64,000 bases of DNA from Macrostomum lignano (lineage: Eukaryota). Location: contig NIVC01002589.1 in the NCBI GenBank assembly GCA_002269645.1, forward strand, positions 8,783 to 72,782, given 5' to 3'. Of the stretch, positions 1,013-56,848 are shown piece by piece (the first letter of the stretch is position 1; each line of letters begins with the position of its first letter). The position numbers and the translations under genes were made by a program. A model generated the notes under the pieces. It had not been told where the DNA came from and did not search any database. It saw only the letters and a list, made by a program, of their open reading frames with translations.

Positions 1013-1040
1013 CCGAGAATGAGTCGCACAGCCCAGCTGC

Positions 1041-1307: not shown

Positions 1308-1319
1308 GCTGGCTGCTGA

Positions 1320-7143: not shown

Positions 7144-7326
7144 GACTATACTAGCATTGATTTTATTTAATTTTAATGGTAAAGCAAGTTTATAAAACAA
7201 ATTCAAGAAAATGATTTGTTTAATTTTTTGCAGATAATAATAATATAAATCAGATATAATAATGCCTATCTTTTGAGAAAAAAACCATTTTTCATTTGTT
7301 TTTAGCTAGTCAGCTCTTACTTAAAT

Positions 7327-8110
7327 ACTACTCAGCACTGAGTTGCTCACTCCTCACCCACTTGCTTCTCTTTCAGCCAGTGAGCTCTCACTTAAGCACT
7401 ACTCAGCACTGAGTTGCTCACTCCTCACCCACTCGCTTCTCTTTCAGCCAGTGAGCTCTCACTTAAGCACTACTCAGCACTGAGTTGCTCACTCCTCACC
7501 CACTCGCTTCTCTTTCAGCCAGTGAGCTCTCACTTGAGCACTACTCAGCACTGATTTGCTCACTCCTCACCCACTCGCTTCTCTTTCAGCCAGTGAGCTC
7601 TCACTTGAGCACTACTCAGCACTGAGTTGCTCACTCCTCACCCACTCGCTTCTCTTTCAGCCAGTGAGCTCTCACTTGAGCACTACTCAGCACTGAGTTG
7701 CTCACTCCTCACCCACTCGCTTCTCTTTCAGCCAGCAAGCTCTCACTTGAGCACTACTCAGCACTGAGTTGCTCACTCCTCACCCACTCGCTTCTCTTTC
7801 AGCCAGTGAGCTCTCACTTAAGCACTACTCAGCACTGAGTTGCTCACTCCTCACCCACTCGCTTCTCTTTCAGCCAGTGAGCTCTCACTTGAGCACTACT
7901 CAGCACTGAGTTGCTCACTCCTCACCCACTCGCTTCTCTTTCAGCCAGTGAGCTCTCACTTGAGCACTACTCAGCACTGAGTTGCTCACTCCTCACCCAC
8001 TCGCTTCTCTTTCAGCCAGTGAGCTCTCACTTGAGCACTACTCAGCACTGAGTTGCTCACTCCTCACCCACTCGCTTCTCTTCATGCCAGTGAGCTCTCA
8101 CTTGAGCACT
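7327..8110. repeat. 71-bp minisatellite (~11 units) directly upstream of right SUMO copy
   Basis: Unit ctcagcactgagttgctcactcctcacccactcgcttctctttcagccagtgagctctcacttgagcacta, period 71 (7981 to 8052). Confidence 0.97.
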
Positions 8111-8124
8111 AATCAGCAGCCAGC

Positions 8125-8391
8125 ATGTCGGGAACCAACGCCTCCAGCGAGCACATCAACCTGAAGGTGCAGGGCCAGGACGGGGCCGTGATCCACTTCA
8201 AGATCAAGAAGAACACCCCGCTGAGGAAGCTGATGACCACTTACTGCGATAGGCTGGGCCTTCGGGCACAGACCGTCCGCTTCATCTTCGACGGAAACAA
8301 CGTGGAGGAGTCGGACACCCCGGCCACGTTGGACATGGAGGAGAATGACACGATTGAAGTGTTCCAGTCTCAGGTCGGCGGCTGCGTGTGA
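8125..8391 (+). CDS. SUMO: SUMO, intronless, 88 aa; protein identical to the left copy
   Basis: Same protein as 1041-1307. By eye there is one synonymous difference in 267 nt (Glu GAA vs GAG). Confidence 0.96.
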
Positions 8392-8419
8392 GCAGCTGGG
8401 CTGTGCGACTCATTCTCGG

Positions 8420-9205
8420 TGACTGCTATGGGATGTCAGGGCGGTTGTTTTGGGGATTTGGGGAGTTTTTCCCACTGACTGCTATGGGGTGCCAGGGCGG
8501 TTGTTTTGGGGATTTGGGGAGTTTATCCCGCTGACTGCTATTGGGTGCCAGGGCGGTTGTTTTGGGGATTTGGGGAGTTTATCCCACTGACTGCTATGGG
8601 GTGTCAGGGCGGTTGTTTTGGGGATTTGGGGAGTTTTTCCCACTGACTGCTATTGGGTGTCAGGGCGGTTGTTTTGGGGATTTGGGGAGTTTATCCCACT
8701 GACTGCTATGGGGTGTCAGGGCGGTTGTTTTGGGGATTTGGGGAGTTTTTCCCACTGACTGCTATTGGGTGTCAGGGCGGTTGTTTTGGGGATTTGGGGA
8801 GTTTATCCCACTGACTGCTATTGGGTGTCAGGGCGGTTGTTTTGGGGATTTGGGGAGTTTATCCCACTGACTGCTATTGGGTGTCAGGGCGGTTGTTTTG
8901 GGGATTTGGGGAGTTTATCCCACTGACTGCTATGGGGTGTCAGGGCGGTTGTTTTGGGGATTTGGGGAGTTTATCCCACTGACTGCTATGGGGTGCCAGG
9001 GCGGTTGTTTTGGGGATTTTAGGAGTTTATCCCGCTGACTGCTATTGGGTGCCAGGGCGGTTGTTTTGGGGATTTGGGGAGTTTATCCCACTGACTGCTA
9101 TTGGGTGTCAGGGCGGTTGTTTTGGGGATTTGGGGAGTTTATCCCACTGACTGCTATTGGGTGTCAGGGCGGTTTTTTAGGGGGGTTGGAGAGGTTATCC
9201 CACTG
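8420..9205. repeat. 56-bp G-rich minisatellite (~14 units) downstream of right SUMO copy
   Basis: Unit gactgctat(g/t)gggtgtcagggcggttgttttggggatttggggagttt(a/t)tcccact. Confidence 0.97.
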
Positions 9206-10080
9206 ATTTATGTGAATTGCTGTTACCATGTTTATGTATTTTAGCGTTAGTACAACTCATTTTTAGGATATTGGATTTTCGCAGTTAACCACAGGCTTCT
9301 ATGGGATTTTGTCTGTCTGAGAAACCTTGCTTGGATTGCCTGGTGTCCGATGCCCGATTCGAATGACCCACTGTAATAATTTTCTAACTTACCTGTTTAA
9401 ATAATAACTCACGTCATGCAATGTGCGTTCTCAGCTAGTATTGTTAATAATATACACGAGTAATAAAACCGGCGAATTACATAATACCAGCTGTGCAGTG
9501 TTCGAATAATAATGTATCTATTTTTAGCACTTGCTCGCCCCTGTCTGTCGCAGTCTCCGTCTGTCTTGTAATTCTTTATTTTATCCGTTCGCTTTTTACA
9601 TATATAATCTATCGTTTTTATGCACTTCTAAATTATTCGTAATTGTGAATAGTTATTCAGGCTTTTGAATTCGTGGGAACTTGTATCGCGTGTTACTACT
9701 GTTGTGGAGTAGCTGCTTTGGAAATATTCATACTAATTCAATACAAGAAGAAAAAATGATGTAATAATCCTAAAATATAAAGTCTCGGCTCGGTCATTCT
9801 TATTTGTACTTTTTTAACATCGACTTTGTGCAAAGAAATTCCTCTCTGCAATAAGCGTGTTTTAAGTTGTCAGTGACTTGGTGTACCCAAAATCTGTAGA
9901 AGAATCTCGGCCAATTTAAGTAGCAGGTTGCAATCGATTTCTAAGAAATGGGCAGTGATTCATTTGGATTTAGTATGCTCTCATCAAGAAAGCATATACA
10001 TCGCTTAGTGTGGTTTAGCCATAGACAAATTCGGTCGACCGGATACTCGTATATCGACTGCATGGCCACTGCATTACCTA

Positions 10081-11075
10081 AGGATCTGGGAGGCTGCTGA
10101 TTTGGGATAGCTGTGGACATATCCTGGGGATTTGGGATAGCTGTGGACACACCCTGATGATCTGGGATAGCTGTGGACACATCCTGAGGATCTGGGATAG
10201 CTGTGGACACACCCTAAGGATCTGGGATAGCTGTGGACACACCCTGAGGATCTGGGATAGCTGTGGACACACCCTGAGGATCTGGGATAGCTGTGGACAC
10301 ACCCTGAGGATCTGGGATAGCTGTGGACACACCCTGAGGATCTGGAATAGCTGTGGACACATTCTGGGGATTTGGGATAGCTGTGGAAACATCCTGGGGA
10401 TTCGGGATAGCTGTGGAAACATCCTGGGGATTTGGGATAGCTGTGGAAACATCCTGGGGATTTGGGATAGCTGTGGAAACATCCTGGGGATTTGGGATAG
10501 CTGTGGAAACATCCTGGGGATTCGGGATAGCTGTGGAAACATCCTGGGGATTTGGGATAGCTGTGGAAACATCCTGGGGATTTGGGATAGCTGTGGAAAC
10601 AACCTGGGGATTTGGGATAGCTGTGGAAACATCCTGGGGATTTGGGATAGCTGTGGAAACATCCTGGGGATTTGGGATAGCTGTGGAAACAACCTGGGGA
10701 TTTGGGATAGCTGTGGACACATCCTGGGGATTTGGGATAGCTGTGGAAACATTCTGGGGATTTGGGATAGCTGTGGACACATCCTGGGGATTTGGGATAG
10801 CTGTGGAAACAACCTGGGGATTTGGGATAGCTGTGGACACATCCTGGGGATTTGGGATAGCTGTGGACACATCCTGGGGATTTGGGATAGCTGTGGAAAC
10901 AACCTGGGGATTTGGGATAGCTGTGGACACATCCTGGGGATTTGGGATAGCTGTGGAAACAACCTGGGGATTTGGGATAGCTGTGGACACATCCTGGGGA
11001 TTTGGGATAGCTGTGGACACATCCTGGGGATTTGGGATAGGTGTGGACACACCCTGAGGAGCTGGGATAGCTGCA
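10081..11075. repeat. 30-bp minisatellite (~33 units) downstream of DTD1
   Basis: Unit ctgtgga(c/a)acatcctggggatttgggatag; the left units are the ccctgaggatctgggatag variant. Confidence 0.97.
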
Positions 11076-11271
11076 GACACAACTATAAGAATTGGGACTC
11101 AGTCGTGAAGCACGACACAAACAGAAAATTAAATAAAAATGAATAAGAAAAGCAAATTTAGATCTGCTTTACACTCACAATATTAGCTACCCATGTTACA
11201 CTTTTGAGAATTGGCAAATAGCAGCAGAATTACTAAAATATATTTCTACACTATTTAGCAATAGTCCAGCA

Positions 11272-12618
11272 TCAAGTTGCTGCCTCATCGGTTTGCTGAG
11301 CAGTCTTCGGCTCCCGAGTGTCCAAACTGATGGTCACCGGGCCACAGTTGGTGCTGCTGACTTCTATCATGGCGCCAAACACTCCGGCTTTGATTTTGTC
11401 CTCCTGGTAGTCTCGGCGCATCGATTCCAGGATGTCGGCGTACATCTTCTCGGCCTGGTCGGTGGCCATGGCGCGGCGGAAGTCCGGCTTGTTGCCCTGC
11501 CATGTTTTTTGAGAAAGAAATTGGGTTGGGCAACTGAGGATCTGGGAGGTTGGGCAACTGAGGATCTGGGAGGCTGGGCCAGACCTGAGGATCTGGGATT
11601 CTGGCCTAGCAACTGAGAATCTGAGGCTGGCTCCCAGCAACTGAGGATCTGGGATTCTGGCCTAGCAACTGAGAATCTGAGGCTGGCTCCCAGCAACTGA
11701 GGATCTGGGATTCTGGCCTAGCAACTGAGAATCTGAGGCTGGCTCCCAGCAACTGAGGATCTGGGATTCTGGCCTAGCAACTGAGAATCTGAGGCTGGCA
11801 CAGCAACTGAGGATCTGGGAGGCTGGCACAGCAACTGAGGATCTGGGAGGCTGGCACAGCAACTGAGGATCTGGGAGGCTGGCACAGCAACTGAGGATCT
11901 GGGATTCTGGCCTAGCAACTGAGGATCTGGGAGGCTGGCATAGCAACTGAGGATCTGGGATTCTGGCCTAGCAACTGAGAATCTGAGGCTGGCTCCCAGC
12001 AACTGAGGATCTGGGATTCTGGCCTAGCAACTGAGAATCTGAGGCTGGCTCCCAGCAACTGAGGATCTGGGATTCTGGCCTAGCAACTGAGAATCTGAGG
12101 CTGGCACAGCAACTGAGGATCTGGGAGGCTGGCACAGCAACTGAGGATCTGGGAGGCTGGCACAGCAACTGAGGATCTGGGATTCTGGCCTAGCAACTGA
12201 GGATCTGGGAGGCTGGCATAGCAACTGAGGATCTGGGATTCTGGCCTAGCAACTGAGGATCTGGGAGGCTGGCTCAGAAACTGAGGATCTGGGAGGCTGG
12301 CCTAGCAACTGAGAATCTGGAGAATGGCGGTGGCCCAGCCTGAGTCACCTTGAGCGTCGCATGCAGCGTGAACTGGCTGACGACCAGCACCTCCAAGCCG
12401 AGATCCCGGACACTCTTCATCCATCGTTTCCCACCCTGTTCGTCATTTTCGTCGAACAGCCGCAGGTTGAGCAACTTCTTGCTCATCCAGTCGGCGTCCT
12501 GAGCGGTGTCGGACTGGCAGATGCCCAGCAGGACGCAGATGCCCCGGCCAATTTCGCCTACGGTGGCCCCATCAACCACAACAGCAGCTCGGCTGACTCG
12601 CTGCACGATGGCTCGCAT
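11272..12618 (-). CDS. DTD1: D-aminoacyl-tRNA deacylase 1, 2 coding exons (12618-12349, 11496-11272), 164 aa
   Basis: MRAIVQRV..., SQFTL motif, LK|GNKPDF joined across AAG|gtgact ... tggcag|GGC (852-nt phase-0 intron), GVFGAM and N.GPVT motifs. Confidence 0.93.
11525..12320. repeat. 28-bp-based minisatellite filling the DTD1 intron
   Basis: Units gcaactgaggatctggga(gg/tt)ctggc... alternate with gcaactgagaatctgaggctggc..., giving 56-bp and longer higher-order blocks. Confidence 0.95.
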
Positions 12619-12711
12619 GCGCTACTGTAAGTAGGACATATCGATAGGACATTTTTAATTAATGTTGCATTAATGTTGCACGAATTCAAATTTCACCCGT
12701 GCTATCAAATA

Positions 12712-13443
12712 AAGAATCTGAGGGGGAACCGGCGCCAACTGAAGAATCTGAAGGGAAACCGGCGCCAACTGAAGAATCTGAAGGGGAACCGGCGCCAACT
12801 GGAGAATCTGAAGGGGGAACCGGCGCTAACTGAAGAATCTGAAGGGGAGCCGGCGCCAACTGAAGAATCTGAAGGGAGACCTGCGCCAACTGAAGAATCT
12901 GAAGGGAAACCGGCGCCAACTGAAGAATCTGAAGGGGAGCCGGCGCCAACTGAAGAATCTAAAGGGGAGCCGGCGCCAACTGAAGAATCTGAAGGGAAAC
13001 CTGCGCCAACTGGAGAATCTGAAGGGGGAACCGGCGCTAACTGAAGAATCTGAAGGGGAGCCGGCGCCAACTGAAGAATCTGAAGGGAAACCGGCGCCAA
13101 CTGAAGAATCTAAAGGGGAGCCGGCGCCAACTGAAGAATCTGAAGGGAAACCTGCGTCAACTGAAGAATCTGAAGGGGAGCCGGCGCCAACTGAAGAATC
13201 TGAAGGGAAACCGGCGCCAACTGAAGAATCTGAAGGGAAACCGGCGCCAACTGAAGAATCTAAAGGGGAGCCGGCGCCAACTGAAGAATCTGAAGGGAAA
13301 CCTGCGCCAACTGAAGAATCTGAAGGGGAGCCGGCGCCAACTGAAGAATCTGAAGGGAAACCGGCGCCAACTGAAGAATCTGAAGGGGAGCCGGCGCCAA
13401 CTGAAGAATCTGAAGGGGAGCCGGCGCCAACTGAAGAATCTGA
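12712..13443. repeat. 30-bp minisatellite (~24 units) just upstream of the DTD1 start
   Basis: Unit caactgaagaatctgaaggg(g/a)a(g/a)ccggcgc. Confidence 0.96.
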
Positions 13444-13679
13444 CTATGCAGAAATTCTCAATTCCATGGTTAACTATCAAGAAATAAAACAAGATAAGTA
13501 TTAGAAAGTTACAAAATCCACAGCTAGACAAAATATTGTTTTGCATTTTTTATTTGAATCACGCAAGAAAGACGGATGAAAAAGCAAATCCAACAAGTCA
13601 AGGCACTAAATTGATAGCGGGAAAGTAAAAAATCTAACATTTCAATTTGTTTGCAGCGCAATACGGAAAACATCATTTC

Positions 13680-13693
13680 ATTGGACCGATTGG
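13680..13693 (-). promoter_or_regulatory. Two CCAAT boxes (minus strand), possible DTD1 promoter
   Basis: ATTGG at 13680-13684 and 13689-13693 in unique sequence between two arrays. Function is inferred. Confidence 0.25.
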
Positions 13694-13744
13694 CCTGTGA
13701 TTTAAACGGCACTGCACGAAAAGTTGATTCAAGCAATACTGAAG

Positions 13745-14535
13745 ATCAGAAGATCTGGGAGACTGGCGGTGGCCCAGCAAATGAGCATCTGGGAGGCTGG
13801 CCCAACAACTGAGCATCTGGGAGGCTGGCCCAACAACTGAGCATCTGGGAGGCTGGCCCAACAACTGAGGATCTGGGAGGCTGGCCCAACAACTGAGCAT
13901 CTGGGAGGCTGGCCCAACAACTGAGCATCTGGGAGGCTGGCCCAGCAACTGAGCATCTGGGAGGCTGGCCCAACAACTGAGCATCTGGGGGGCTGGCCCA
14001 ACAACTGAGCATCTGGGAGGCTGGCCCAACAACTGAGCATCTGGGAGGCTGGCCCAACAACTGAGCATCTGGGAGGCTGATGGCCCAGCAACTGAGCATC
14101 TGGGAGGCTGGCCCAACAACTGAGCATCTGGGGGCTGGCCCAACAACTGAGCATCTGGGAGGCTGGCCCAACAACTGAGGATCTGGGAGGCTGGCCCAAC
14201 AACTGAGGATCTGGGAGGCTGGCCCAACAACTGAGGATCTGGGAGGCTGGCCCAACAACTGAGCATCTGGGGGCTGGCCCAACAACTGAGCATCTGGGAG
14301 GCTGGCCCAACAACTGAGCATCTGGGAGGCTGGCCCAACAACTGAGGATCTGGGAGGCTGGCCCAACAACTGAGGATCTGGGAGGCTGGCCCAACAACTG
14401 AGGATCTGGGAGGCTGGCGGTGGCACAAAAACTGAGGATCTGAGATTTTGGTCTAGCAACAGAGGATCTGAGAGGATGTTCTAGCAACAGAGGATCTGAG
14501 AGGATGTTCTAGCAACTGAGGATCTGGAAGGTTGG
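13745..14535. repeat. 28-bp minisatellite (~28 units) between HINT3 and DTD1
   Basis: Unit caacaactgag(c/g)atctgggaggctggcc; same family as the DTD1 intron array. Confidence 0.96.
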
Positions 14536-14731
14536 CAGTCACAGTCTGAAGATAGTCGGAGTTAGTGCGCAGGACAGTTGAAAACCAAAGTAGTTGTTAG
14601 TGAGTTCTACGTACTTCATCTACTTTTACTTAAATTTAAAAAATGTTATTACCGCTGTATTTCAAAAGAGACTATGTACTTTTGAAAGGAGAGTATTGTA
14701 GATTTAAAAATAAATAAAAGTGTAAATATTT

Positions 14732-17700
14732 TCAAATCATCGCTTTAGTCAGGTTTTCAGTTGGTTCCGGCAGCTTCTGCAGGTGACTGATTACGTCATT
14801 GACCTGAAATGAAAATTTATGAAGGTGCTCATATTAAATCACATTAGATTAAACTAAATTACAGCATACGTAATTAATAATTTGACAAGGACAAGTACAT
14901 ATATGAATGAAATTCAGAGCATCCGGATCTTATGTTCTAAACTTAAATCTAGTCTGTGGCGCTAAAATCTAACATGTGGCGCTAAAATCTAGCATGTGGC
15001 GCTAAAATCTAGTCTGTGGCGCTAAAATTTAGCATGTGGCGCTAAAATCTAGTCTGTGGCGCTAAAATCTAGCATGTGGCGCTAAAATCTAGTCTGTGGC
15101 GCTAAAATCTAATTTGTGGCGCTAAAATCTAGCATGTGGCGCTAAAATCTAGTCTGTGGCGCTAAAATTTAGCATGTGGCGCTAAAATCTAGCATGTGGC
15201 GCTAAAACCTAGCATTTGGCGCTAAAATCTAGTCTGTGGCGCTAAAATCTAGCATGTGGCTATAAAATCTATTCTGTGGCGCTTAAATCTAACATGTGGC
15301 GCTAAAATCTAGCATGTGGCGCTAAAATCTAGCATGTGGCGCTAAAATCTAGCATGTGGCGCTAAAATCTAGCATGTGGCGCTAAAATCTAGCATGTGGC
15401 GCTAAAATCTAGTCTGTGGCGCTAAAATTTAGCATGTGGCGCTAAAATCTAGCATGTGGCGCTAAAATCTAGCATGTGGCGCTAAAATCTAGCATTTGGC
15501 GCTAAAACCAAGCATTTGGTGCTAAAATCTAGTCTGTGGCGCTAAAATCTAATCTGTGGCGCTAAAATCTAACATGTGGCGCTAAAATCTAACATGTGGC
15601 GCTAAAATCTAACATGTGGCGCTAAAATCTAGTCTGTGGCGCTAAAATCTAGCATGTGGCTATAAAATCTAGTCTGTGGCGCTAATGTCTAACATGTGGC
15701 GCTAAAATCTAGTCTGTGGCGCTAAAATCTAGCATGTGGCTATAAAATCTAGTCTCTGGCGCTAAAATCTAGCCTTACATTGACTATGGGTGATGCGGCT
15801 CATGCCATAATTTAAAACTCACAGTTTTAAAAGTTTTACCACCAGCCGTATACCTATGACTGCGGACCCGACTGGCTGGGGACAGCACGTGCAAATGCAA
15901 ATGATTCACTGAATTAAACGGAGGCCAGTGGAAACCGCATCTGTGAAGAGGGGAGGCGGGTTAAAGAATAAATTATAGTTCTCGGTATGAACTTACGGAC
16001 ACAAACCACGGTGACTTGGAGCCGTATTTGAGCTCGGCTAAGCAGCCCATGCTACTGACTGGGCTAATGAGGTGCAGGTGCAGGTGGCTCACGGAAGTGA
16101 ATGGCGGCCAATGGAACCCAATCCTACAAGTGAATTGGAGCTCCATTGAAGATGCTTGCCTCCGGTAGCTGCTACCACCCATTCTTCAGGGTGAGTTGTC
16201 GATGCCCCTGATTCCTCAGTCAGTTGCTCTCCCCCTGATTCCTCAGCCAGTTGCTTTCCCCCTGATTCTTCAGGCAGCTGCTCTCCCCACCCCTGATTCT
16301 TCAGGCAGCTGCTCCCCTCCCCCTGATTCTTCAGGCAGCTGCTCTCCCCACCCCTGATTCTTCAGGCAGATGCTCTCCCCACCCCTGATTCTTCAGGCAG
16401 ATGCTCTCCTCACCCCTGATTCTTCAGGCAGCTGCTCTCCCTCCCCCTGATTCTTCAGGCAGATGCTCTCCCCACCCCTGATTCTTCAGGCAGATGCTCT
16501 CCCCACCCCTGATTCTTCAGGCAGCTGCTCTCCCCTCCCCCTGATTCTTCAGGCAGCTGCTCTCCCCACCCCTGATTCTTCAGGCAGCTGCTCTCCCCTC
16601 CCCCTGATTCTTCAGGCAGCTGCTCTCCCCACCCCTGATTCTTCAGGCAGCTGCTCTCCCCACCCCCTGATTCTTCAGGCAGCTGTTCTCCCCTCCCCCT
16701 GATTCTTCAGGCAGCTGCTCTCCCCTCCCCCTGATTCTTCAGGCAGCTGCTCTCCCCTCCCCCTGATTCTTCAGGCAGATGCTCTCCCCTCCCCCTGATT
16801 CTTCAGGCAGATGCTCTCCTCACCCACTGATTCTTCAGGCAGCTGCTCTCCCCTCCCCCTGGTTCTTCAGGCAGTTGCTCTCCTCACCCACTGATTCTTC
16901 AGGCAGCTGCTCTCTCCTCCCCTGGTTCTTCAGGCAGTTGCTCTCCTCACCCACTGATTCTTCAGGCAGCTGCTCTCCCCTCCCCTGGTTCTTCAGGCAG
17001 TTGCTCTCCTCACCCACTGATTCTTCAGGCAGCTGCTCTCCCCTCCCCCTGATTCTTCAGGCAGCTGCTCTCCCCTCCCCCTGATTCTTCAGGCAGATGC
17101 TCTCCCCTCCCCCTGATTCTTCAGGCAGATGCTCTCCTCACCCACTGATTCTTCAGGCAGCTGCTCTCCTCACCCACTGATTCTTCAGGCAGCTGCTCTC
17201 CCCTCCCCCTGGTTCTTCAGGCAGCTGCTCTCTCCTCCCCTGGTTCTTCAGGCAGCTGCTCTCCCCACCCCTGATTCTTCAGGCAGCTGCTCTCCTCACC
17301 CACTGATTCTTCAGGCAGCTGCTCTCTCCTCCCCCTGATTCTTCAGGCAGCTGCTCTCTCCTCCCCTGGTTCTTCAGGCAGTTGCTCTTCTCACCCACTG
17401 ATTCTTCAGGCAGCTGCTCTCCCCACCCCTGATTCTTCAGGCAGTTGCTCTCCCCTCCCCCTGATTCTTCAGGCAGATGCTCTCCTCACCCACTGATTCT
17501 TCAGGCAGATGCTCTCCCCTCCCCCTGATTCTTCAGGCAGCTGCTCTCCCCTCCCCCTGATTCTTCAGGCAGCTGCTCTCCCCTCCCCCTGATTCTTCAG
17601 GCAGCTGCTCTCCCCTCCCCCTGATTCTTCAGGCAGATGCTCTCCTCACCCACTGATTCTTCAGGCAGCTGCTCTCCCCTCCCCCTGGTACTTCAGGCAG

Positions 17701-18983
17701 TTGCTCTCCTCACCCACTTATTCTTCAGGCAGCTGCTCTCTCCTCCCCTGGTTCTTCAGGCAGCTGCTCTCCCCACCCCTGATTCTTCAGGCAGCTGCTC
17801 TCCTCACCCACTGATTCTTCAGGCAGCTGCTCTCTCCTCCCCTGATTCTTCAGGCAGCTGCTCTCTCCTCCCCTGGTTCTTCAGGCAGTTGCTCTTCTCA
17901 CCCACTGATTCTTCAGGCAGCTGCTCTCCCCTCCCCTGATTCTTCAGGCAGCTGCTCTCCCCTCCCCCTGATTCTTCAGGCAGCTGCTCTCCCCTCCCCC
18001 TGATTCTTCAGGCAGCTAATCTCTCTCTACTCATAAACTTTACTGGATGATTTATCATAATGTTAGTGGTTGAATGGTTGATTGACAACTAAGGTTAAAG
18101 TATTTATGCAGCTGACACTTGCCTGGCATCTTGTACATTAGCACCAAGCCTAGACAATGCCTCCAAACCAGAGGTTTCCAATAGTTTCACAAGCTCAATA
18201 TCATTCTTTGTCAGTTGCTTGCAGTCTTTGATATGGATGACTGGACAAGACAATAGGTGGTAAGTTGCAGCTGGACAAATATCGTGGAAGACTATCACTT
18301 GATCTGTCTGGAAAGTAAGAAATATTTTTAAATCATTTTATTTCATAATAATTTATGTGGCATAAAAATATTTAAAAGATAAATATTGAAATTTATAACC
18401 TTTTTAGCTTTTATAAACAAAATATACTATGTTTTTTATAATTTTCAATAGTAATAGCTTTTTTAAAAACAAAATTGGAATAATTTGGTATTTTTAGGTC
18501 ATCTAGGTCATCTTAGGTTTAAAAAAGCTATATTTGCTTTGTTTTAAATGTTTTTGCTTAGGATTGGATAGATAAAAATCTTTTTTATCCTTGATCTCTA
18601 ACCTTTCGCCTTCAGTGGGTTGTTCTCCCTTTCTCATTTTTTAGTTTTTTCTAGTTTGAAAAACTATGCCAGTCTAGTGACCAGGCTGGGATATTATAAG
18701 CATTTATATATCTATAATCTAGACTAGACCATATATTAATTAAGATAAATAAATAAATAAAACTAAAGCTATGATATAATATAGGTCTAAGACTAAAATA
18801 AGCAAATAATGGATAGGCTTAAAGTTTTAATATATACTCAGACAGCAATATAGGACTCAGACAGCCAAGCAAAATAATCATATAACTTACTTGAAGAACA
18901 ATGTCAGATTGCTGTCTTTTATGATCAACTATATCACAAAAGGTACAGTTCCTGCGCTTTTGATGCTCTTTAGGCTTGGGCAT
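14732..18983 (-). CDS. HINT3: Histidine triad nucleotide-binding protein 3; exons 18983-18891, 18307-18123, [16123-15997 OR 15940-15823], 14803-14732; 158 or 155 aa
   Basis: Manual splice model: MPKPKEHQKRRNCTFCDIV...IVLQ | TDQVIVFHDICPAATYHLL...DAR | IGFHWPPFTSVSHLHLHLISP...PWFVS | VNDVISHLQKL...MI*. All junctions have consensus acceptors and gtaagt/gcaagt/gtgagt donors in compatible phase. The CxFC, DIxPAAxxHxL and GFHxPPFxSxxHLHLH motifs are characteristic of HINT3. Confidence 0.9.
14945..15775. repeat. 20-bp minisatellite (~41 units) in the last HINT3 intron
   Basis: Unit gtggcgctaaaatctag(ca/tc)t. Confidence 0.97.
15823..15940 (-). CDS. HINT3: HINT3 alternative exon 3b (118 nt): (R)CGFHWPPFNSVNHLHLHVLSPASRVRSHRYTAGGKTFKT
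   Basis: Acceptor cctcttcacag|A and donor ACT|gtgagt; same phases as exon 3a; paralogous sequence with an intact HxHxH. Absent from the ORF track. Confidence 0.85.
15997..16123 (-). CDS. HINT3: HINT3 alternative exon 3a (127 nt): (R)IGFHWPPFTSVSHLHLHLISPVSSMGCLAELKYGSKSPWFVS
   Basis: Acceptor ttcacttgtag|G and donor TCC|gtaagt; HIT motif HLHLH. Confidence 0.88.
16200..18017. repeat. 31-32-bp minisatellite (~56 units) in HINT3 intron 2
   Basis: Unit ctgattcttcaggcag(c/a/t)tgctctcccc(t/a)cccc with interspersed variants. Confidence 0.97.
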
Positions 18984-18995
18984 TCACAATTATCT

Positions 18996-19110
18996 CTGTT
19001 AATAGGCGTTCGTATAAAAAGTTGCTAATTTTGGTTAAGGTTGCAGCTTGCTAAATAATAAACTGATTCCCTTATATAACTGCTGCGCCGCTATATGCCT
19101 ATATACTTAC
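18996..19110 (-). other. Candidate 115-nt 5'-UTR intron of HINT3
   Basis: Donor caaca|gtaagt at 19110 and acceptor attaacag| ending at 18996, 12 nt before the ATG. An in-frame TGA directly precedes the ATG. Confidence 0.45.
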
Positions 19111-19550
19111 TGTTGCGTACGGCTAAATATATGACTGTAATTTTGCAAAATATGACGTAAGACGAAAAATTTTAGTTTACATTGCAATTGTCTCCCATCC
19201 ACTAATTTTTAAACCATCAATCTTTATTTCTACAATAATGGGCTCAATATTTTGACTTTTCAAAGCTGGAGAGAACTATGTGTATTTTTTGTATTATCAA
19301 CATCTAAATGTTTGTTAAAGTTAAATACATAAATTCAGAAAGTTCCCGTAGCCAAGCATATAATCGATCGATTCAAGTAGCTCATCGTATATTTTATTCA
19401 ATATTTAACGGCACACCAGACACCAAAGTCAAAAAAGTAAGCTCAAAAAAAAAAATTGATACTTGCATACATCTCTAGAACATGCAGTTATACATCCGAT
19501 TATGTGCAATTATGAAATTTTCATTCAAACAAGAATTCTAAGACTAAAAG

Positions 19551-21377
19551 TTATACAATCCGATCAATGAAATTCGTATTCAGCAAGTAGTGCTCATAAC
19601 AACATGGTCGTATCAAGCCACTATCCGACTTTTGCGGCCTTGAGAACGGATTTCGGTGCCACTTCCACGCCCTAAAGCCAAGGTCAAAGATGCCCAGAAG
19701 AATGCGAATATATCGATCATATTTAGATTTTCTTCGAAAAAAGCCATCCGTATGAGTCTCAAAAAGAAACTGCTTCACTCTCGTCAGGCAGCCGTCCTGC
19801 AAAGCTTGCTCAAACGCAGCCCACTCCCAATATTCGACGTCAACTTTTAGAATATCTATTGTTCCATTTCCGGGCACAAGTTCTTGGAACAGATCACATA
19901 GAGTGCGCATCTTCCAGCCTTCCGGTGATGTCTTGTTGCTGAATGACAACCCTGATCGATAAAACCACGATGTCTTCCGACGCTTGTGATCATTCACTTT
20001 GGACATACTCGGATCGAACATGAACACTCGGCAGTGAAATTTGTCGGCTAGCTCGTCATCGTACTTCCACATGTAGTTGATTCCAAAGGAAAACGCGGTG
20101 CACTGCTTCGCTGAATCAATGCTGAACGGCTCACTGAAGCAGACATCCCAGCCACCATCGTTTTCTTCGCCGATCCGTCTGCTGTAAGGACAGAAAAGAT
20201 GCTGCTGCTCCACCAGCTGAAAGTACAGGTGATCGAGTTGAGCTGGAGACATTGTGGTCAGGTTTGCTTGACGTACAGTCATCAGTTGGTCGAAGCCGGG
20301 GCTTCGGGAAATCGGGAGATTCTTTAATGGAAGGTCGATCGTACTTTTAATTCTGTTTCTGAGTTGATGATTAACAGTAGTATTATGCAGGAAGTTGATG
20401 TTGATGTAGCTGACGCTGATACCGGATGCGGTATCTAGTCGCATATTCCACTGTCGGAATCCAGCATTGTGCAGGCCAATCAGAGCAAGGATGCTACGAA
20501 TGAGCTCTTTATTAGTCAGGGAACCTTTCCTGTTAGAGCTAATAGTCAGCACAAGCTGCTTCGTCAACACCAATGAACCATCGTTGGCAGCTGCCTCAAG
20601 TGATAACCAATCTTCTGGCCCGACATTAACCTTCAGCACGTCGATGACAGTTTGCTTGGCTTTGAATCGCTTCAGGTAGCCCTGATAGCTGTCAGATCTG
20701 ACATTTCCTGCAGTCTGTGCGGCACTCAGGCCCTCCTTCAGAAGTATCACCTGGCTGCTGTGCATGTGGCTCGGCTGTTTCATCGTCGGGTCGAACACCA
20801 GCGCGTAGCAGCCGTGGCCGGCGGACAGATCCTCTTCGAAGCGCAATGAGGAGGACGCGCTGCCACCGAATGAGAAGCTGTAGCACGGCCGGCTGGGCTG
20901 GAACGGGCCCACCGTGCACAAGCCGTGGCCAGCGCGTCTCCGATCAGCGACTGCTATTCGACGTCCGAATCGGCTGCTGATAGAGCAGTGCGCTGTCGGC
21001 CGCGTCACAATCTGCTCTAATTGAACTTCTAAGGTCTCCAATGCCATGCTGAACAGCCTGTGGTCTTCTAGCAGATTCGGGAACTGCTGGGTCGTCACGG
21101 ATATGTTTCCGTTAGGCAGGCGGTACAGCACAGTCGATCCATCATGGCTAAGCACGGACTCAATGATCTTGTCTCTATGGGCATTGCTGACTGTCTCAGA
21201 GTGCTCTGGCTGAGCTACTCTGCGCTGAAGCTTCAAGGTCAGAATAGTTGTCAGAAGCAGACTAACAAAAATAATCGCTGCTGTTCTTTGTCGGGACAGC
21301 TTTCTCAGGCAGGCGCATTGCAGTAAGACTGACAGCGACTGAAGCTGAAACGTTTTCTTGCTGTATCGGTTTCTCAT
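19551..21377 (-). CDS. METTL24: METTL24-like (Methyltransf_22-type) protein with an N-terminal membrane anchor and two tandem methyltransferase-like domains, 608 aa, intronless
   Basis: The C-terminal domain has RIG..DGGWDVC, FSFGI, CRVFMFDPSM, IDILKVDVE.WEW and KQFLFETH, typical of the family. There is a hydrophobic segment at aa ~33-48. The symbol is family-level. Confidence 0.8.
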   Translation of the reverse strand: MRNRYSKKTFQLQSLSVLLQCACLRKLSRQRTAAIIFVSLLLTTILTLKLQRRVAQPEHSETVSNAHRDKIIESVLSHDGSTVLYRLPNGNISVTTQQFPNLLEDHRLFSMALETLEVQLEQIVTRPTAHCSISSRFGRRIAVADRRRAGHGLCTVGPFQPSRPCYSFSFGGSASSSLRFEEDLSAGHGCYALVFDPTMKQPSHMHSSQVILLKEGLSAAQTAGNVRSDSYQGYLKRFKAKQTVIDVLKVNVGPEDWLSLEAAANDGSLVLTKQLVLTISSNRKGSLTNKELIRSILALIGLHNAGFRQWNMRLDTASGISVSYININFLHNTTVNHQLRNRIKSTIDLPLKNLPISRSPGFDQLMTVRQANLTTMSPAQLDHLYFQLVEQQHLFCPYSRRIGEENDGGWDVCFSEPFSIDSAKQCTAFSFGINYMWKYDDELADKFHCRVFMFDPSMSKVNDHKRRKTSWFYRSGLSFSNKTSPEGWKMRTLCDLFQELVPGNGTIDILKVDVEYWEWAAFEQALQDGCLTRVKQFLFETHTDGFFRRKSKYDRYIRILLGIFDLGFRAWKWHRNPFSRPQKSDSGLIRPCCYEHYLLNTNFIDRIV

Positions 21378-21727
21378 TGCAGTATAGTATAGAATTCTTA
21401 ATTATGTCTCCCTCTTTCAAGAATGTTCGGCACAAGCTGTATATAATTAACCTGCCGTCAGCATTGAACAGGAAGTTCAAGCTGGAGCCAATTTCTGATA
21501 TGCTGACCTTGTCCTAGTTTTGTGCCCCTACATTATAAAACCTACTGCATGCGAAGATAGTATTAATTCTCTTGCAGTCCTGCCTCTAAAGCCCCTAAAC
21601 AATATCTACATGTAAAAGCTGCCCGCAAACTGCCATATGGTTGCTGTATACTGACTAAAATAGTTACTTATTATTATACACTTACACGAAAGGTCAATTC
21701 AGGCAATACTGAAGCTCATACAAAAAA

Positions 21728-22020
21728 TCTGGGAGGCTGGCCCATGCAGCAACTGAGGATCTGGGAGGCTGGCCCATGCAGCAACTGAGGATCTGGGAGG
21801 CTGGCCCATGCAGCAACTGAGGATCTGGGAGGCTGGCCCAGCAACTGAGGATCTGGGAGGCTGGCCCATGCAGCAACTGAGGATCTGGGAGGCTGGCCCA
21901 GCAACTGAGGATCTCTGAGGCTGGCCTAGCAACTGACACTCTGGGAGGCTGGCACAGCAACTGAGGATCTGAGAGGCTGGCCCAGAAACTGAGGATCTGG
22001 GTGGCTGGCCCAGGAACTGA
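21728..22020. repeat. 28/31-bp minisatellite (~10 units) upstream of the METTL24-like gene
   Basis: Unit gcaactgaggatctgggaggctggccca(tgca); same family as 11525-12320 and 13745-14535. Confidence 0.93.
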
Positions 22021-22527
22021 GATTATTTTCTCTGTGTATTTTCCTTGTATTTCTATTCTCAGTAGAGTATCAAATAAAAGTTCAGTATAATTTATACCAC
22101 TTATTGTTGTTGATTGTACACTGTATTTTAATTTATCTATTTGTTAGTTTTAGTACACTGTATTCTGTTGCGGTTCAGCCAAGTAAATATAAATATAATG
22201 GAGATGTCTATAGCTCACAGCTCACTTAATGTCTTCTCAAGTACAACGGCAACTGCAATACACAACAGTGGTCACGATTATAATCTCATTATGCTCTTAA
22301 ACCTTATCAACAACTTAAACTTCCTTTTACGAAATGCTAGAGTTAATTATCTGCAATGTCCCCCTACACTATTGATAGTAGACGCAAGAGAGAAAGTAAA
22401 CTTGCATTTGTTCGTAAATGCAGAATATGAACAACCCAAGAGAGATAGGAAGTGCTCGGTCTTTGAGAACTAAATTGACAATCTCTCTGAGCTTTTGAAT
22501 CGCAAATGAAGCAAGAAAATGTAAATG

Positions 22528-23587
22528 ACCTTTCTACACTCCCTGGCGCCTTTCTACATTTTCTTGGCGCTTTTATACATTATCTGGCGCCTTTTTACAC
22601 ACCTTGGTGCCTTTCTACATAAACTGGCGCCTTCTACACTCCTTGGCGCCTTTTTACATTCCCTGGCGCCTTTCTACACAACTTGGCGCCTTTCTACACT
22701 CCTTGGCGCCTTTCTACACTCCTTGGCGCCTTTCTACACTCCTTGGCGCCTTTCTACACTCTGGTACCTTTCTACATTCCCTGGCGCCTTTCTACACACC
22801 TTGGCGCCTTTCTACACCCCTTGACACCTTTCTACACTCCTTGACGCCTTTCTACACTCCTTGGCGCCTTTCTACACTCCTTGGCGCCTTTCTACACTCC
22901 TTGACGCCTTTCTACACTCCTTGGCGCCTTTCTACACTCCTTGACGCCTTTCTACACTCCTTGACGCCTTTCTACACTCCTTGACGCCTTTCTACACTCC
23001 TTGACGTTTTTCTACACTCCTTGGCGCCTTTCTACACTCCTTGACGCCTTTCTACACTCCTTGACGCCTTTCTACACTCCTTGACGCCTTTCTACACTCC
23101 TTGGCGCCTTTCTACACTCCTTGGCGCCTTTCTACAATCCTTGGCGCCTTTCTACACTCCTTGGCGCCTTTCTACACTCCTTGGCGCCTTTCTACACTCC
23201 TTGACGCCGTTCTACACTCCTTGGCGCCTTTCTACACACCCTGGCGCTTTTCTACATTCACTGGCACCTTTCTACACAACTTGGCGCCTTTCTACACTCT
23301 GGTACCTTTCTACATTCCCTGGCGCCTTTCTACATTCCCTGGCGCCTTTCTACATTCACTGGCACCTTTCTACACAACTTGGCGCCTTTCTACACTCCTT
23401 GGCGCCTTTCTACACTCCTTGACGCCTTTCTACACTCCTTGGCGCCTTTCTACACTCCTTGACGCCTTTCTACACTCCTTGGCGCCTTTCTACACACCTT
23501 GGCGCCTTTCTACACACCTTGGCGCCCTTCTACATTCCCTGGAATCTTTCTCCATTCCTTGGTGCGTTTCTACATCCCCTGGCGCCC
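22528..23587. repeat. 20-bp minisatellite (~53 units)
   Basis: Unit ccttg(g/a)cgcctttctacact. Confidence 0.96.
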
Positions 23588-25649
23588 ATGAAACTCAATT
23601 GACTGGTGCTTAACAACACACAACAGTACTTCCAGAATCTGCTCCTTTATTATTCGTGTCTTTACAACTCGATGTGGTGACGCAAGTCGCGAGATTTCAG
23701 TAGTCACTAGGGCACTATAATGATTCTGAGAGCTTGGGGATTCAGTTATTTGTACCGAAACCAAAATTATTATGCGATAATTTCAATATGAAACACACAA
23801 AATTGACTTAACTCGTCAAGCTAATCTATGCCCACAGAATGCACAACAATAACAGAATTTGCAAGTATAACATCTGCGAATATGTTATAACATAAACTGG
23901 TATGCGAAGCCCTGACTGCTTGCGCCATCTTCTTGAGCTAGAATTTTAATTCACTCAAAAGATAATGTAAGCTAGCTCGGAGACTTGCTTGACTTGTTTG
24001 CTTTTGCACCCGGTAGGTAACACAGGAACAATGACCCAGGTAGTTAATATCGTTCATTCACTTATTCATTCACTGGTGAGGGAGTTTGACAAACCTGCCC
24101 ATAGAGCAGACGTCCCCTATTAAGACTTAATGGAGAAGGGAAAAATCTGTGTAAATTTTAACCAATTGCTACAGTAATGTCCTACCCGCTGAGTAAATAG
24201 TCTTTGTAGCAGATGATGCGGAAACTTTGAGCTCACAATCGACTTTTCATATTAAGCATCAATTGTGCTCAAATCAAAGTCTTCAAGGCGTTCAAGCGAT
24301 GGCAATTCAATTTCAATTTGTGTAGAAATTTTTATAGCACAATGGTCAGTGCCCGAGCATGGTCTGTGTCTTCTGAGAGGCCCCAGCGGGGCGGCGGTCC
24401 CTAACTCTGCAGGTCCAGCATGCTATCTTGGAAGAACTGACTGACCCTCAATACGTAATCGAGGCCTTAGAAGTCAGTCGGCCTTAAACTAATGGAAGAT
24501 TTAACAAGCATTTTGTTTCAAGGATGCATTTTATTGTCTCTTGCAGGGGCAATTTATTGTTGGAAAAATATTTAGTAAGTCATAAATAAAATTTTCCCAC
24601 CTAAAAGATGAGCCTCCGGCCTCCTGTCAGGGTGTCAAAGATGCCACACCCCTTTTGCTTCACCTGTCCATCTGGGGAGGCAAAATATGACTAGTATTGC
24701 TGCAGACAAATTTGCCTGTTTTTGTCACCTCAGCTTGACCAGTGGAACGCAGAGTTCCAGTCCAGCTGTCTCACGCAGAGTCAGGTGCGAAATGTTTATT
24801 GCAGAGGCTGAGAGGCTATCGCAAGAGCTGTTTACTTCGCAATTAAATTTAAATTGGGCGAAGTTTTCTTAGAAAGTGTAGAGGACCATCAGCTGATTCC
24901 TCCATTATACGCTCGTAGCTGCATTGAATCAGGACATGCCGAATCCGAATGCGTGCGGTTGCTATGGCCTCGAAATTAAACGAAAGTCTCTGTGGATGGC
25001 AGTGACACAACTTGGTCAGTTTCCAGCGCTCTCTCCCTATTAAGCAAAAGGAAAAATTTCATAACACATCCGCCCGGGCTCGCACAAGCGGAGGGCGGGG
25101 CTCCAACATCCAGCTTCATCTAGAAGTCCACTTCATCATTATTAAAAATTGAGAGAGACAGAGAGCCTATATATATGCGTTGTTTATTAGAAATTCTATC
25201 TGTCTTATTAGTTCGGTTTGCCTGTTGGTCTGCCCACGGATACGACCTCACCTCACCTCCCATCCACCCCAGATATTAATTTGCATAGACTATATCGCGA
25301 TTGCTTCACAATGTAGAACTCAACTTTTAATTACCGTTTGTTCAGACGGAGGCTATAGGAGTCTGGGACCGATGATGAGGCGGTGCCAATTTTGAGTCTC
25401 GGTTTTGACTGAGCCCCGCCCACTCTGTCTCAGCCTCGATCCTGCAGTTGAATTGGTCACTTTACGGTGGGACTAGTAATTACCTGATGTTGTGTTGAAA
25501 TATTTATTCGATAGAGGAAAGAATATAGAAATTCAATGCCTGCGCTGCTTATAGAAGTATCGCTCACTGGTTTCCGAGAATTCTCTCAAATACTTTCCAT
25601 CTATTTGCCTCTCCGGTCCGCTTCTCTGTTCCATAACTGCCTCTCTCTT

Positions 25650-35232: not shown

Positions 35233-36210
<978 letters not shown>

Positions 36211-47967: not shown

Positions 47968-47969
47968 AG

Positions 47970-56848
<8,879 letters not shown>

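What the first reader, a model, noticed from the sequence alone, without database searches (positions are those of the whole stretch)
15823..16123. HINT3 has two tandem, mutually exclusive exons, each carrying the catalytic histidine triad
Seen: exon 3a (16123-15997, IGFHWPPFTSVSHLHLHLISPVSSMGCLAELKYGSKSPWFVS) and exon 3b (15940-15823, CGFHWPPFNSVNHLHLHVLSPASRVRSHRYTAGGKTFKT) are paralogous. Both have consensus splice sites and the same phases (2 in, 0 out) and are only 56 nt apart. Joining both gives ATG CGG TTT CCA CTG GCC TCC GTT TAA, an early stop. A branch-like TTAAC lies ~35 nt from the 3a donor, the geometry known to exclude double inclusion sterically. The triad region is conserved while the segment after it differs completely, which suggests selection on both copies. 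Known: in HINT enzymes the C-terminal loop after the HIT motif shapes substrate specificity. Inference: one gene makes two HINT3 enzymes with swapped active-site exons. I know of no description of this for HINT3, but could not search.
Basis: partly seen in the sequence, partly recalled or inferred. Interest (0 to 1): 0.85.

Follow-up and report, generated by a model that had tools for sequence, protein, structure and literature searches.

The report
Duplicated catalytic exon in flatworm HINT3
The HINT3 enzyme gene of the flatworm Macrostomum lignano carries two old, adjacent copies of the exon that encodes its catalytic histidine motif; both have been kept intact by selection and only one can be used per mRNA, but use of the second copy is not yet shown.

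Summary
The window is Macrostomum lignano contig NIVC01002589.1. HINT3 lies on the minus strand as exon 1, exon 2, 3a, a 56-nt intron, 3b and exon 4. 3a (127 nt) and 3b (118 nt) are homologous, have AG/GT splice sites and share the same phases. Including both, or neither, shifts the frame into a stop.

New evidence favours a real second coding exon. Over the first 24 codons, synonymous sites are saturated (pS 0.90) while pN is 0.17. None of 200,000 random placements of the same number of substitutions kept the protein as similar. The two copies are as diverged in DNA as HINT3 exons of different phyla, so the duplication is old and the triad of 3b stayed under purifying selection. AlphaFold2 gives both isoforms the same HIT fold.

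Three points count against or remain open:
- The RNA-seq-guided NCBI models use only 3a.
- No 3b-containing protein and no close relative exists in any collection searched.
- 3b replaces a Trp conserved in at least 90% of HINT3 proteins.

The steric-exclusion claim is not established, because flatworms splice introns shorter than 75 bp. This is a probable new member of a well-known kind, tandem-duplicated mutually exclusive exons. Interest is moderate.

The parts
18891..18983 (-). HINT3 exon 1. ATG at 18983. Encodes MPKPKEHQKRRNCTFCDIVDHKRQQSDIVLQ, donor GTAAGT, phase 0.
   Evidence: The C-x-F-C motif aligns with HINT3 orthologues. The 5'-partial NCBI models do not include this exon.
18123..18307 (-). 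HINT3 exon 2 (185 nt). It ends in phase 2 and is followed by a GC donor (AG|GCAAGT).
   Evidence: The NCBI protein reads ...QDAR|IGFHW, so the GC donor is the one used.
16124..18122 (-). Intron 2 (GC-AG, 1999 nt), filled by a 32-nt minisatellite of about 57 copies at 16229-18017.
16108..16149 (-). Predicted 17-bp RNA hairpin across the exon 3a acceptor. The 5' arm is the weak polypyrimidine region, the 3' arm is the first 16 nt of 3a, and the AG lies at the loop edge.
   Evidence: dG -21.9 kcal/mol, z -3.68, 1 of 200 shuffles fold as well. A role in exon choice is inferred, not shown.
15997..16123 (-). Exon 3a (127 nt, 3n+1). It has the canonical HIT exon length and tail (HLHLH ... Y ... WF) and is the exon used in the annotated mRNAs.
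   Evidence: The orthologous exon is also 127 nt with the same phases in termite and vertebrate-like loci.
15941..15996 (-). 56-nt intron between 3a and 3b (GTAAGT...CACAG). It has a branch-like CTTTAAC at 15966-15960 (branch A at 15961) and a strong polypyrimidine tract before the 3b acceptor.
   Evidence: No significant secondary structure.
15823..15940 (-). Exon 3b (118 nt, 3n+1). A paralogous HIT exon with an intact HLHLH triad. The tail is 3 codons shorter, basic (RVRSHR), and has Thr-Phe where other HINT3 proteins have Trp-Phe. Donor GTGAGT.
   Evidence: Identical in the second M. lignano contig copy L001.
14804..15822 (-). Intron 3 (1019 nt), filled by a 20-nt minisatellite of about 41 copies at 14945-15773. 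Acceptor TTTCAG.
14732..14803 (-). Exon 4 coding part, VNDVISHLQKLPEPTENLTKAMI followed by a stop. It is shared by both isoforms.

Best explanation
3a and 3b descend from an ancient tandem duplication of the 127-nt HIT exon of M. lignano HINT3. Both have been kept as coding exons, and they are spliced as alternatives, producing two adenosine-5'-monophosphoramidase-type HINT3 isoforms.

- Isoform A (158 aa, with 3a) is canonical and dominant.
- Isoform B (155 aa, with 3b) keeps the His-x-His-x-His catalytic motif. It replaces the following amphipathic helix and the conserved Trp with a shorter, basic segment, which probably alters substrate or partner recognition.

Proposed mechanism (inferred): the weak GC donor of exon 2 pairs with one of two acceptors. 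One is the 3a acceptor, which comes first but has a weak pyrimidine tract and lies in a hairpin. The other is the strong 3b acceptor. Whichever exon is chosen is then joined to exon 4.

Exactly one exon is enforced at least by reading frame. Both exons are 3n+1, so double inclusion or double skipping gives a premature stop and presumably decay. The 35-nt spacing between the 3a donor and the 3b branch site may add to this.

Shown here: the anatomy, the homology, the phases, the frameshift logic, the signature of selection, and the 3a-to-exon-4 junction in the annotated mRNA. Inferred: that 3b is actually included in any mRNA, how the choice is regulated, the role of decay, and any biochemical difference between the isoforms.
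For: - Exact exon anatomy and frames.
- HINT3 identity of both isoforms. Pfam DcpS_C scores 9.9e-27 and 2.4e-26 and HIT passes for both. Orthologues are named HINT3.
- Selection over the first 24 codons. 24 of 72 nt differ but only 6 of 24 residues differ. Nei-Gojobori pS is 0.90 (saturated) and pN is 0.17.
- Randomisation. None of 200,000 random placements of 24 substitutions gave 6 or fewer amino-acid changes without a stop. Fisher p is 5.5e-7.
- Age. 3a and 3b are 67% identical in DNA (third positions 48%). That is no closer than either is to HINT3 exons of other phyla, where the mean is 61-62%. The duplication is therefore old, and a neutral 3b would have lost the motif.
- At the sites where 3a and 3b differ within the triad region, 3b carries residues common in 155 HINT3 homologues. 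One example is Val after the triad, at 61% frequency against 5% for the Leu of 3a.
- The length difference is 9 nt, which is in frame. The conserved Tyr, the invariant Phe and the terminal Ser/Thr of the tail are kept.
- 3b has the best splice signals of the cluster, yet the annotated mRNA skips it. This is what a one-or-the-other arrangement predicts.
- AlphaFold2 gives the same fold for both isoforms, mean pLDDT 90.3 for A and 89.4 for B. The isoform B model matches aprataxin and HINT1 structures.
- The pair meets all sequence criteria used to predict mutually exclusive exons (PMC3228551). In C. elegans most such homologous 3n+1 clusters proved real and were policed by NMD (PMC4165533).
Against: - No transcript or protein containing 3b was found. 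Both RNA-seq-guided gene models use 3a.
- No 3b-type protein exists among 5.8 billion clustered proteins, and neither isoform is in the collection as an exact sequence. This negative is weak, because the canonical full-length protein is also absent and the annotation pipeline dropped minor isoforms (PMC5730564).
- 3b has Thr where at least 90% of close HINT3 orthologues have Trp. It also lacks the hydrophobic M-x-F-L positions of the tail.
- The open frame of the 16-codon tail is not significant by itself; a chance open frame has probability about 0.46.
- Conservation of 3b in other Macrostomum species could not be tested.
- The second genomic copy is identical over all unique sequence compared except one base in exon 2, and therefore gives no information.
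Confidence: 0.55

Rival explanations
1. 3b is a relic. It was a functional alternative exon for a long time but is now a silent pseudo-exon that is always skipped. Only isoform A is made.
For: - Only 3a appears in the annotated mRNAs.
- The 3b tail has lost the near-invariant Trp and the hydrophobic helix positions, and has a 9-nt deletion.
- No 3b-type protein was found anywhere.
Against: - The triad half shows no decay at all, despite saturated synonymous divergence.
- Both splice sites are consensus, and the polypyrimidine tract is the best of the cluster.
- The deletion is in frame.
- Decay confined to the tail, with a perfect catalytic half, is not what uniform neutral drift gives.
- A strong unused exon 56 nt from a constitutive donor would be a liability.
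Confidence: 0.27
2. 3b acts as a regulatory poison exon. It is included together with 3a after removal of the 56-nt microintron, which creates a premature stop (…WFVS-MRFPLASV-stop) and lowers HINT3 output or yields a C-terminally truncated protein.
For: - Double inclusion gives a stop 9 codons into 3b, about 91 nt before the last junction.
- Introns shorter than 75 bp are a normal class in flatworms, including M. lignano (PMC6530080), so the 56-nt intron may well be spliceable.
- 3b has strong splice sites.
Against: - A poison exon needs no protein-level conservation. Here the amino-acid sequence is conserved while synonymous sites are saturated.
- The frame that is conserved is the one used when 3b replaces 3a, not the one read after double inclusion.
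Confidence: 0.12
3. 3b is a recent insertion copied from another, diverged HINT3-like locus. Its conservation would then reflect selection elsewhere, not in this gene.
For: - 3b resembles the HINT3 consensus more than 3a does at several sites.
- Its third-position GC (0.45) differs from that of 3a (0.74).
Against: - No second HINT3-type protein of M. lignano was found with either query.
- The copy has the same phases and intact splice sites, and sits exactly between 3a and exon 4, as tandem exon duplication predicts.
- Its tail is unlike that of any HINT3 seen.
- Its GC3 matches the other exons of this same gene, which range from 0.35 to 0.54.
Confidence: 0.04

Closest known systems
Homologous mutually exclusive exon clusters made by tandem exon duplication. 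Examples are C. elegans let-2 exons 9/10 and the other 22 homologous clusters (PMC4165533), and predicted Drosophila clusters (PMC3228551). General principle: Kondrashov & Koonin 2001 and Letunic et al. 2002, as cited in PMC4165533.
   Same: - Adjacent internal exons of near-equal length with the same phases and clear homology.
- Exon length of 3n+1, so that two or zero copies shift the frame.
- A short intervening intron.
   Different: - Mutually exclusive use is not demonstrated here; only the 3a form is annotated.
- The 56-nt intron is above the roughly 40-nt limit used for steric exclusion in C. elegans.
Sterically enforced exon pairs. Examples are alpha-tropomyosin exons 2/3 (Smith & Nadal-Ginard 1989, cited in PMC4165533) and OGDH exons 4a/4b, which have branch points close to the 5' splice site (PMC7969005).
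   Same: The best branch-like site for the downstream exon lies only 35 nt from the upstream exon's donor.
   Different: - The minimum donor-to-branch spacing is unknown for flatworms, which routinely splice microintrons (PMC6530080).
- The branch point is predicted from a motif, not mapped.
Enzymes whose alternative duplicated exons change the catalytic or regulatory core. Examples are pyruvate kinase M exons 9/10 (own knowledge), ATE1 exons 7a/7b (PMC7797038), and C. elegans gly-5 and gly-6 (PMC4165533).
   Same: One gene would give two enzyme forms that differ only in a homologous segment next to the active site.
   Different: - Here the duplicated segment contains the catalytic nucleophile motif itself.
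- No biochemical difference between the forms is known.
HINT3 (adenosine 5'-monophosphoramidase HINT3) of other animals.
   Same: - The same domain pair, DcpS_C and HIT.
- 33-48% identity to named HINT3 proteins.
- The same 127-nt HIT exon with the same phases in termite and vertebrate-like loci.
   Different: None of the 88 other HINT3 loci examined carries a second HIT exon; 55 of them have at least 500 nt of flank on both sides. No paper in the searched library links HINT3 or the histidine triad with mutually exclusive or duplicated exons.

Membership tests
HINT3 (HIT superfamily, aprataxin/HINT3 branch) | Histidine triad His-x-His-x-His-x-x after a G-[FY]-H-x-P-P segment. | tested here: met
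   Both 3a (GFHWPPFTSVSHLHLHLI) and 3b (GFHWPPFNSVNHLHLHVL) carry it. These columns are invariant or nearly so in 108 orthologues.
HINT3 (HIT superfamily, aprataxin/HINT3 branch) | Pfam DcpS_C (PF11969) and HIT (PF01230) above their gathering scores. | tested here: met
   Isoform A scores 94.1 and 30.8 bits. Isoform B scores 92.9 and 35.1 bits. The cut-offs are 24 and 21.5.
HINT3 (HIT superfamily, aprataxin/HINT3 branch) | The closest named relatives are HINT3, and the closest solved structures are aprataxin and HINT. | tested here: met
   (named HINT3 from many phyla). (aprataxin, then HINT1).
HINT3 (HIT superfamily, aprataxin/HINT3 branch) | Conserved Trp-Phe in the strand after the triad. 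Trp is present in at least 90% of close orthologues and Phe is invariant. | tested here: inconclusive
   3a has WF. 3b has TF, so Phe is kept and Trp is lost. Isoform A meets the feature and isoform B only half.
HINT3 (HIT superfamily, aprataxin/HINT3 branch) | Nucleoside phosphoramidase or acyl-AMP hydrolase activity. | not testable with these tools
   This needs recombinant protein assays.
Tandem-duplicated mutually exclusive exons | Neighbouring internal exons of similar length, with the same splice-site type and reading frame and no in-frame stop (criteria of PMC3228551). | tested here: met
   127 nt against 118 nt, a 9-nt difference. Both are AG...GT, phase 2 in and phase 0 out, and open.
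Tandem-duplicated mutually exclusive exons | The exons encode homologous peptides. | tested here: met
   18 of 24 residues identical in the first 24 codons. TBLASTN E 3e-9.
Tandem-duplicated mutually exclusive exons | Both copies are under purifying selection. | tested here: met
   pS 0.90 against pN 0.17. None of 200,000 randomisations matched the observed conservation, and Fisher p is 5.5e-7. This holds for the triad half; the tail is too diverged to test.
Tandem-duplicated mutually exclusive exons | [quoted passage not shown] | not testable with these tools
   Only 3a-containing models exist. No read-level RNA data are on hand. No 3b protein was found in the collections.
Tandem-duplicated mutually exclusive exons | Both exons are conserved in related species. 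| not testable with these tools
   No Macrostomum relative turned up in any collection. The best non-lignano hit is below 50% identical. The second M. lignano copy is identical.
Sterically enforced exclusion (alpha-tropomyosin type) | The donor-to-branch-point distance of the intervening intron is below the minimum the spliceosome needs. | tested here: inconclusive
   The distance to the best branch-like motif is 35 nt and the intron is 56 nt. However, microintrons shorter than 75 bp occur in M. lignano (PMC6530080), the C. elegans limit is about 40 nt of intron (PMC4165533), and a human 56-nt intron is spliced (PMC8363638).
Frame- and NMD-policed exclusion | Exon lengths are not a multiple of three, so double inclusion or double skipping creates a premature stop. 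| tested here: met
   Both exons together give MRFPLASV-stop. Neither exon gives SMT-stop. Decay of such mRNAs was not testable.
Poison (unproductive-splicing) exon | Conservation is at the nucleotide level without protein-coding constraint. | tested here: not met
   Synonymous sites are saturated while the peptide is conserved.

The most novel reading that the evidence does not exclude
M. lignano really makes two HINT3 enzymes from one gene by swapping the exon that carries the catalytic histidine triad. The second form has lost the family's conserved Trp and gained a short basic lid, which would give it a different substrate or partner range. The choice would be set at the GC donor of exon 2 by a hairpin over the 3a acceptor. 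This would be the first case of mutually exclusive catalytic-motif exons in the HIT superfamily.
Probability: 0.45. Interest if true: 0.55.

Novelty: new member of a known kind. Interest (0 to 1): 0.4.

Why it matters
HINT3 is the least understood animal HINT enzyme. It has no solved structure and its physiological substrate is unclear. A natural pair of isoforms that differ only in the 40 residues around and after the catalytic triad would be a ready-made experiment on what that segment contributes to specificity. It would also add an annotated alternative isoform to a regeneration model whose published gene set kept only dominant isoforms. In a wider sense it is one more example of a common evolutionary route, tandem exon duplication leading to alternative exons, so it does not change general understanding.

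Tried and rejected
- **Search for a 3b-containing protein.** I queried full-length isoform B, made exact look-ups of both isoforms, and queried the genomic stop-to-stop frames around 3a and 3b joined together. Only the two NCBI 3a models turned up. The canonical full-length protein is also absent, so the negative says little.
- **Search for close relatives to test conservation.** I ran a profile search of 5.8 billion proteins, HMMER over 1.84 billion representatives and a metagenome contig scan. Nothing was closer than about 48% identity. The best ENA hits are intronless genes.
- **Allelic or homeologous comparison.** Contig NIVC01001551.1 (L001) carries the same locus, but its unique sequence is identical apart from one base in exon 2. 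This comparison therefore has no power.
- **Tandem HIT exons elsewhere.** None was found in 88 other loci. The few proteins with two triads are whole-gene tandems or fusions.
- **Frameshifted remnant in the 3b tail.** The other two frames of the 3b tail do not encode the canonical tail, so this idea was rejected (read).
- **Long-range or competing RNA structure.** The fold across 3a-3b is not significant (z -1.63). Only the local hairpin at the 3a acceptor stands out.
- **Other features and literature.** Rfam found nothing in 13500-21500, and the plus strand holds no ORF of note. Literature searches found no description for HINT3 or the histidine triad, and the locus tags appear in no paper.
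Full report
**Where the window comes from.** A 15-kb stretch of the window (9000-24000) that contains the finding is 100% identical to Macrostomum lignano contig NIVC01002589.1 of assembly GCA_002269645.1 (locus L002). A second contig of the same assembly, NIVC01001551.1 (L001), carries the same locus at 96-99.6% identity, with the differences lying mostly in minisatellites.

**The gene.** On the minus strand I reconstructed a HINT3 gene with these parts:
- Exon 1, 18983-18891. It starts at an ATG and encodes the C-x-F-C strand.
- Exon 2, 18307-18123, followed by a GC donor (AG|GCAAGT).
- Exon 3a, 16123-15997.
- A 56-nt intron.
- Exon 3b, 15940-15823.
- Exon 4, with its coding part at 14803-14732.

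Introns 2 and 3 are filled by a 32-nt and a 20-nt minisatellite. With 3a the product is 158 aa; with 3b it is 155 aa.

Both products pass Pfam DcpS_C and HIT. Their best named relatives are 'adenosine 5'-monophosphoramidase HINT3' from many phyla at 33-48% identity. No HINT3 structure is solved, and aprataxin is the nearest.

The two NCBI protein models for this locus, PAA56696.1 and PAA66543.1, are 5'-partial. They use the GC donor, contain 3a and skip 3b.

**Check of the observation.** Both exons are included gives the stop MRFPLASV*. A branch-like CTTTAAC has its A 35 nt from the 3a donor. Skipping both exons also gives an early stop. The homology is not chance: TBLASTN with 3a finds 3b at E 3e-9.

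Two corrections apply:
- The shared upstream donor is GC rather than GT.
- The tails are not unrelated. They align in frame with a three-codon deletion in 3b, and 3b keeps the conserved Tyr, the invariant Phe and the terminal Ser/Thr.

**Is 3b a live coding exon or debris?** The strongest evidence available here is evolutionary.
- Over the first 24 codons the copies differ at 24 of 72 nucleotides but at only 6 of 24 residues. Nei-Gojobori counts give pS 0.90, which is fully saturated, and pN 0.17.
- I placed 24 random substitutions on either copy 200,000 times. This never gave 6 or fewer amino-acid changes without a stop; the mean was 14.4. A Fisher test on synonymous against non-synonymous sites gives 5.5e-7.
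- The two copies are 67% identical in DNA (48% at third positions). Each is 61-62% identical on average, and up to 75%, to the same exon of HINT3 genes from other phyla.

The duplication is therefore old. An unconstrained copy would have lost the motif long ago.

At the positions where the copies differ inside the triad region, 3b carries residues that are common among 155 homologues, sometimes more common than those of 3a. One example is Val after the triad, at 61% against 5% for the Leu of 3a.

The orthologous exon is 127 nt with the same phases in termite and vertebrate-like contigs. So 3a has the ancestral length, and 3b differs by an in-frame 9-nt deletion.

AlphaFold2, run with an alignment of 108 orthologues, gives both isoforms the same fold at mean pLDDT 90.3 and 89.4. 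The helix after the triad is shortened in isoform B. The isoform B model matches aprataxin and HINT1. This shows compatibility, not function.

**What speaks against.**
- There is no RNA evidence for 3b. The annotation was RNA-seq-guided, but it merged transcripts with TACO at --isoform-frac 0.75 (PMC5730564). It therefore reports essentially the dominant isoform. This establishes that the 3a-to-exon-4 junction is the main one and is silent on minor or tissue-specific forms.
- No protein with the 3b tail exists in the large protein collection. However, the canonical full-length protein is also missing, so M. lignano transcriptomes are evidently not represented for this gene.
- The 3b tail replaces a Trp present in at least 90% of close orthologues, and it loses the hydrophobic positions of the helix after the triad.
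- I could find no species close enough to ask whether 3b is conserved.
- The second M. lignano copy is identical in all unique sequence apart from one base in exon 2.

**How exclusivity would work.** The frame argument is solid. Both exons are 3n+1, so two or zero copies end in a premature stop. This is the arrangement found for most homologous mutually exclusive clusters in C. elegans, many of which rely on nonsense-mediated decay (PMC4165533).

The steric argument is not solid:
- The 35-nt spacing between donor and branch site is below mammalian limits.
- However, flatworms, explicitly including M. lignano, have a class of microintrons under 75 bp (PMC6530080).
- C. elegans excises introns down to about 40 nt (PMC4165533).
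- A human 56-nt intron is spliced with the help of SPF45 (PMC8363638).

I therefore treat steric hindrance as possible but unproven.

Two features may bias the choice made at exon 2's donor. That donor is a weak GC type. The 3a acceptor also has a poor pyrimidine tract and lies in a predicted 17-bp hairpin (dG -21.9 kcal/mol, z -3.68). By contrast, the 3b acceptor has a long pyrimidine tract and no such structure. That the annotated mRNA skips an exon with such good signals is itself what a one-or-the-other arrangement predicts.

**Rival readings.**
- A relic pseudo-exon, functional in the past but silent now, remains plausible at about 0.27. It fits the missing Trp and the missing transcripts. 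It does not explain the flawless triad half and splice sites.
- A poison exon included together with 3a (about 0.12) fits a spliceable microintron. It would not need protein-level conservation in the replacement frame.
- A recent insertion from a diverged paralogue (about 0.04) is not supported. No second HINT3-type protein of M. lignano was found. The third-position GC of 3b (0.45) also matches the other exons of this gene, while 3a (0.74) is the outlier.

**Comparison with what is known.** Tandem exon duplication giving mutually exclusive exons is a common and well-described route (PMC4165533, PMC3228551, PMC9013439). Several enzymes use it near their active or regulatory sites, for example ATE1 (PMC7797038) and OGDH (PMC7969005). 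For HINT3 or the HIT superfamily I found no description. None of 88 other HINT3 loci has a second HIT exon. The finding is thus a probable new member of a known kind, specific so far to the Macrostomum lineage.

**Verdict.** Interest is moderate (0.4). The decisive test is junction-level RNA evidence together with a look at other Macrostomum genomes.

Noticed in passing
window 18121-18122 (minus strand), donor of HINT3 intron 2: The intron upstream of the duplicated exons is a GC-AG intron (AG|GCAAGT). The NCBI protein confirms that this donor is used. A GT six bases further on would also be in frame. Weak GC donors are often linked with regulated splicing (own knowledge).
   Followed up: partly
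window 16108-16149 (minus strand): A predicted 17-bp hairpin encloses the exon 3a acceptor (dG -21.9 kcal/mol, z -3.68). The 3b acceptor has nothing comparable.
   Followed up: partly
window 15823-16123: Third-position GC is 0.74 in exon 3a, 0.45 in 3b and 0.35-0.54 in the other HINT3 exons. The annotated canonical exon is the compositional outlier, and this is unexplained.
   Followed up: no
window 18891-18983 and 19551-21377 (minus strand): Both NCBI HINT3 models are 5'-partial and miss exon 1, which holds the ATG and the C-x-F-C strand. A 608-aa single-exon ORF ends 568 nt upstream of the HINT3 ATG. The locus tag suffix 'g2' suggests that HINT3 is the second gene of a polycistronic, trans-spliced transcriptional unit.
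   Followed up: no
window 607-1713 and 7300-9206: A 56-nt array followed by a 71-nt array (607-1012, 1314-1713) reappears as reverse complements in the opposite order (7300-8118, 8420-9206). Together they form a giant inverted pair of minisatellite blocks around an AT-rich interior, reminiscent of a foldback-type element. A ubiquitin-like gene is called at 8125-8391, between the two arrays of the right-hand pair.
   Followed up: no
whole window, e.g. 47955-56839, 38233-45545, 35233-36210: The tandem-repeat load is extreme. It includes an 8.9-kb (ACAG)n tract, a 7.3-kb array of a 238-nt unit and dozens of 12-75-nt minisatellites (54 TRF rows). Most introns here, in both HINT3 and the D-Tyr-tRNA deacylase gene, consist mainly of such arrays.
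   Followed up: no
window 11530-12320, 13770-14418, 14331-14503, 21727-22021: One 28-nt minisatellite family (GCAACTGAGGATCTGGGAGGCTGGCCCA and variants) recurs at several places. One copy lies inside the single intron of the D-Tyr-tRNA deacylase gene at 11272-12618 on the minus strand.
   Followed up: no
L074, L076, L085-L090 (metagenome contigs): Host-genome contigs in metagenomes carry the HINT3 HIT exon as a separate 127-nt exon with the same phases as 3a. These come from termite-like and vertebrate-like sequences, so this exon boundary is ancient in bilaterians.
   Followed up: partly
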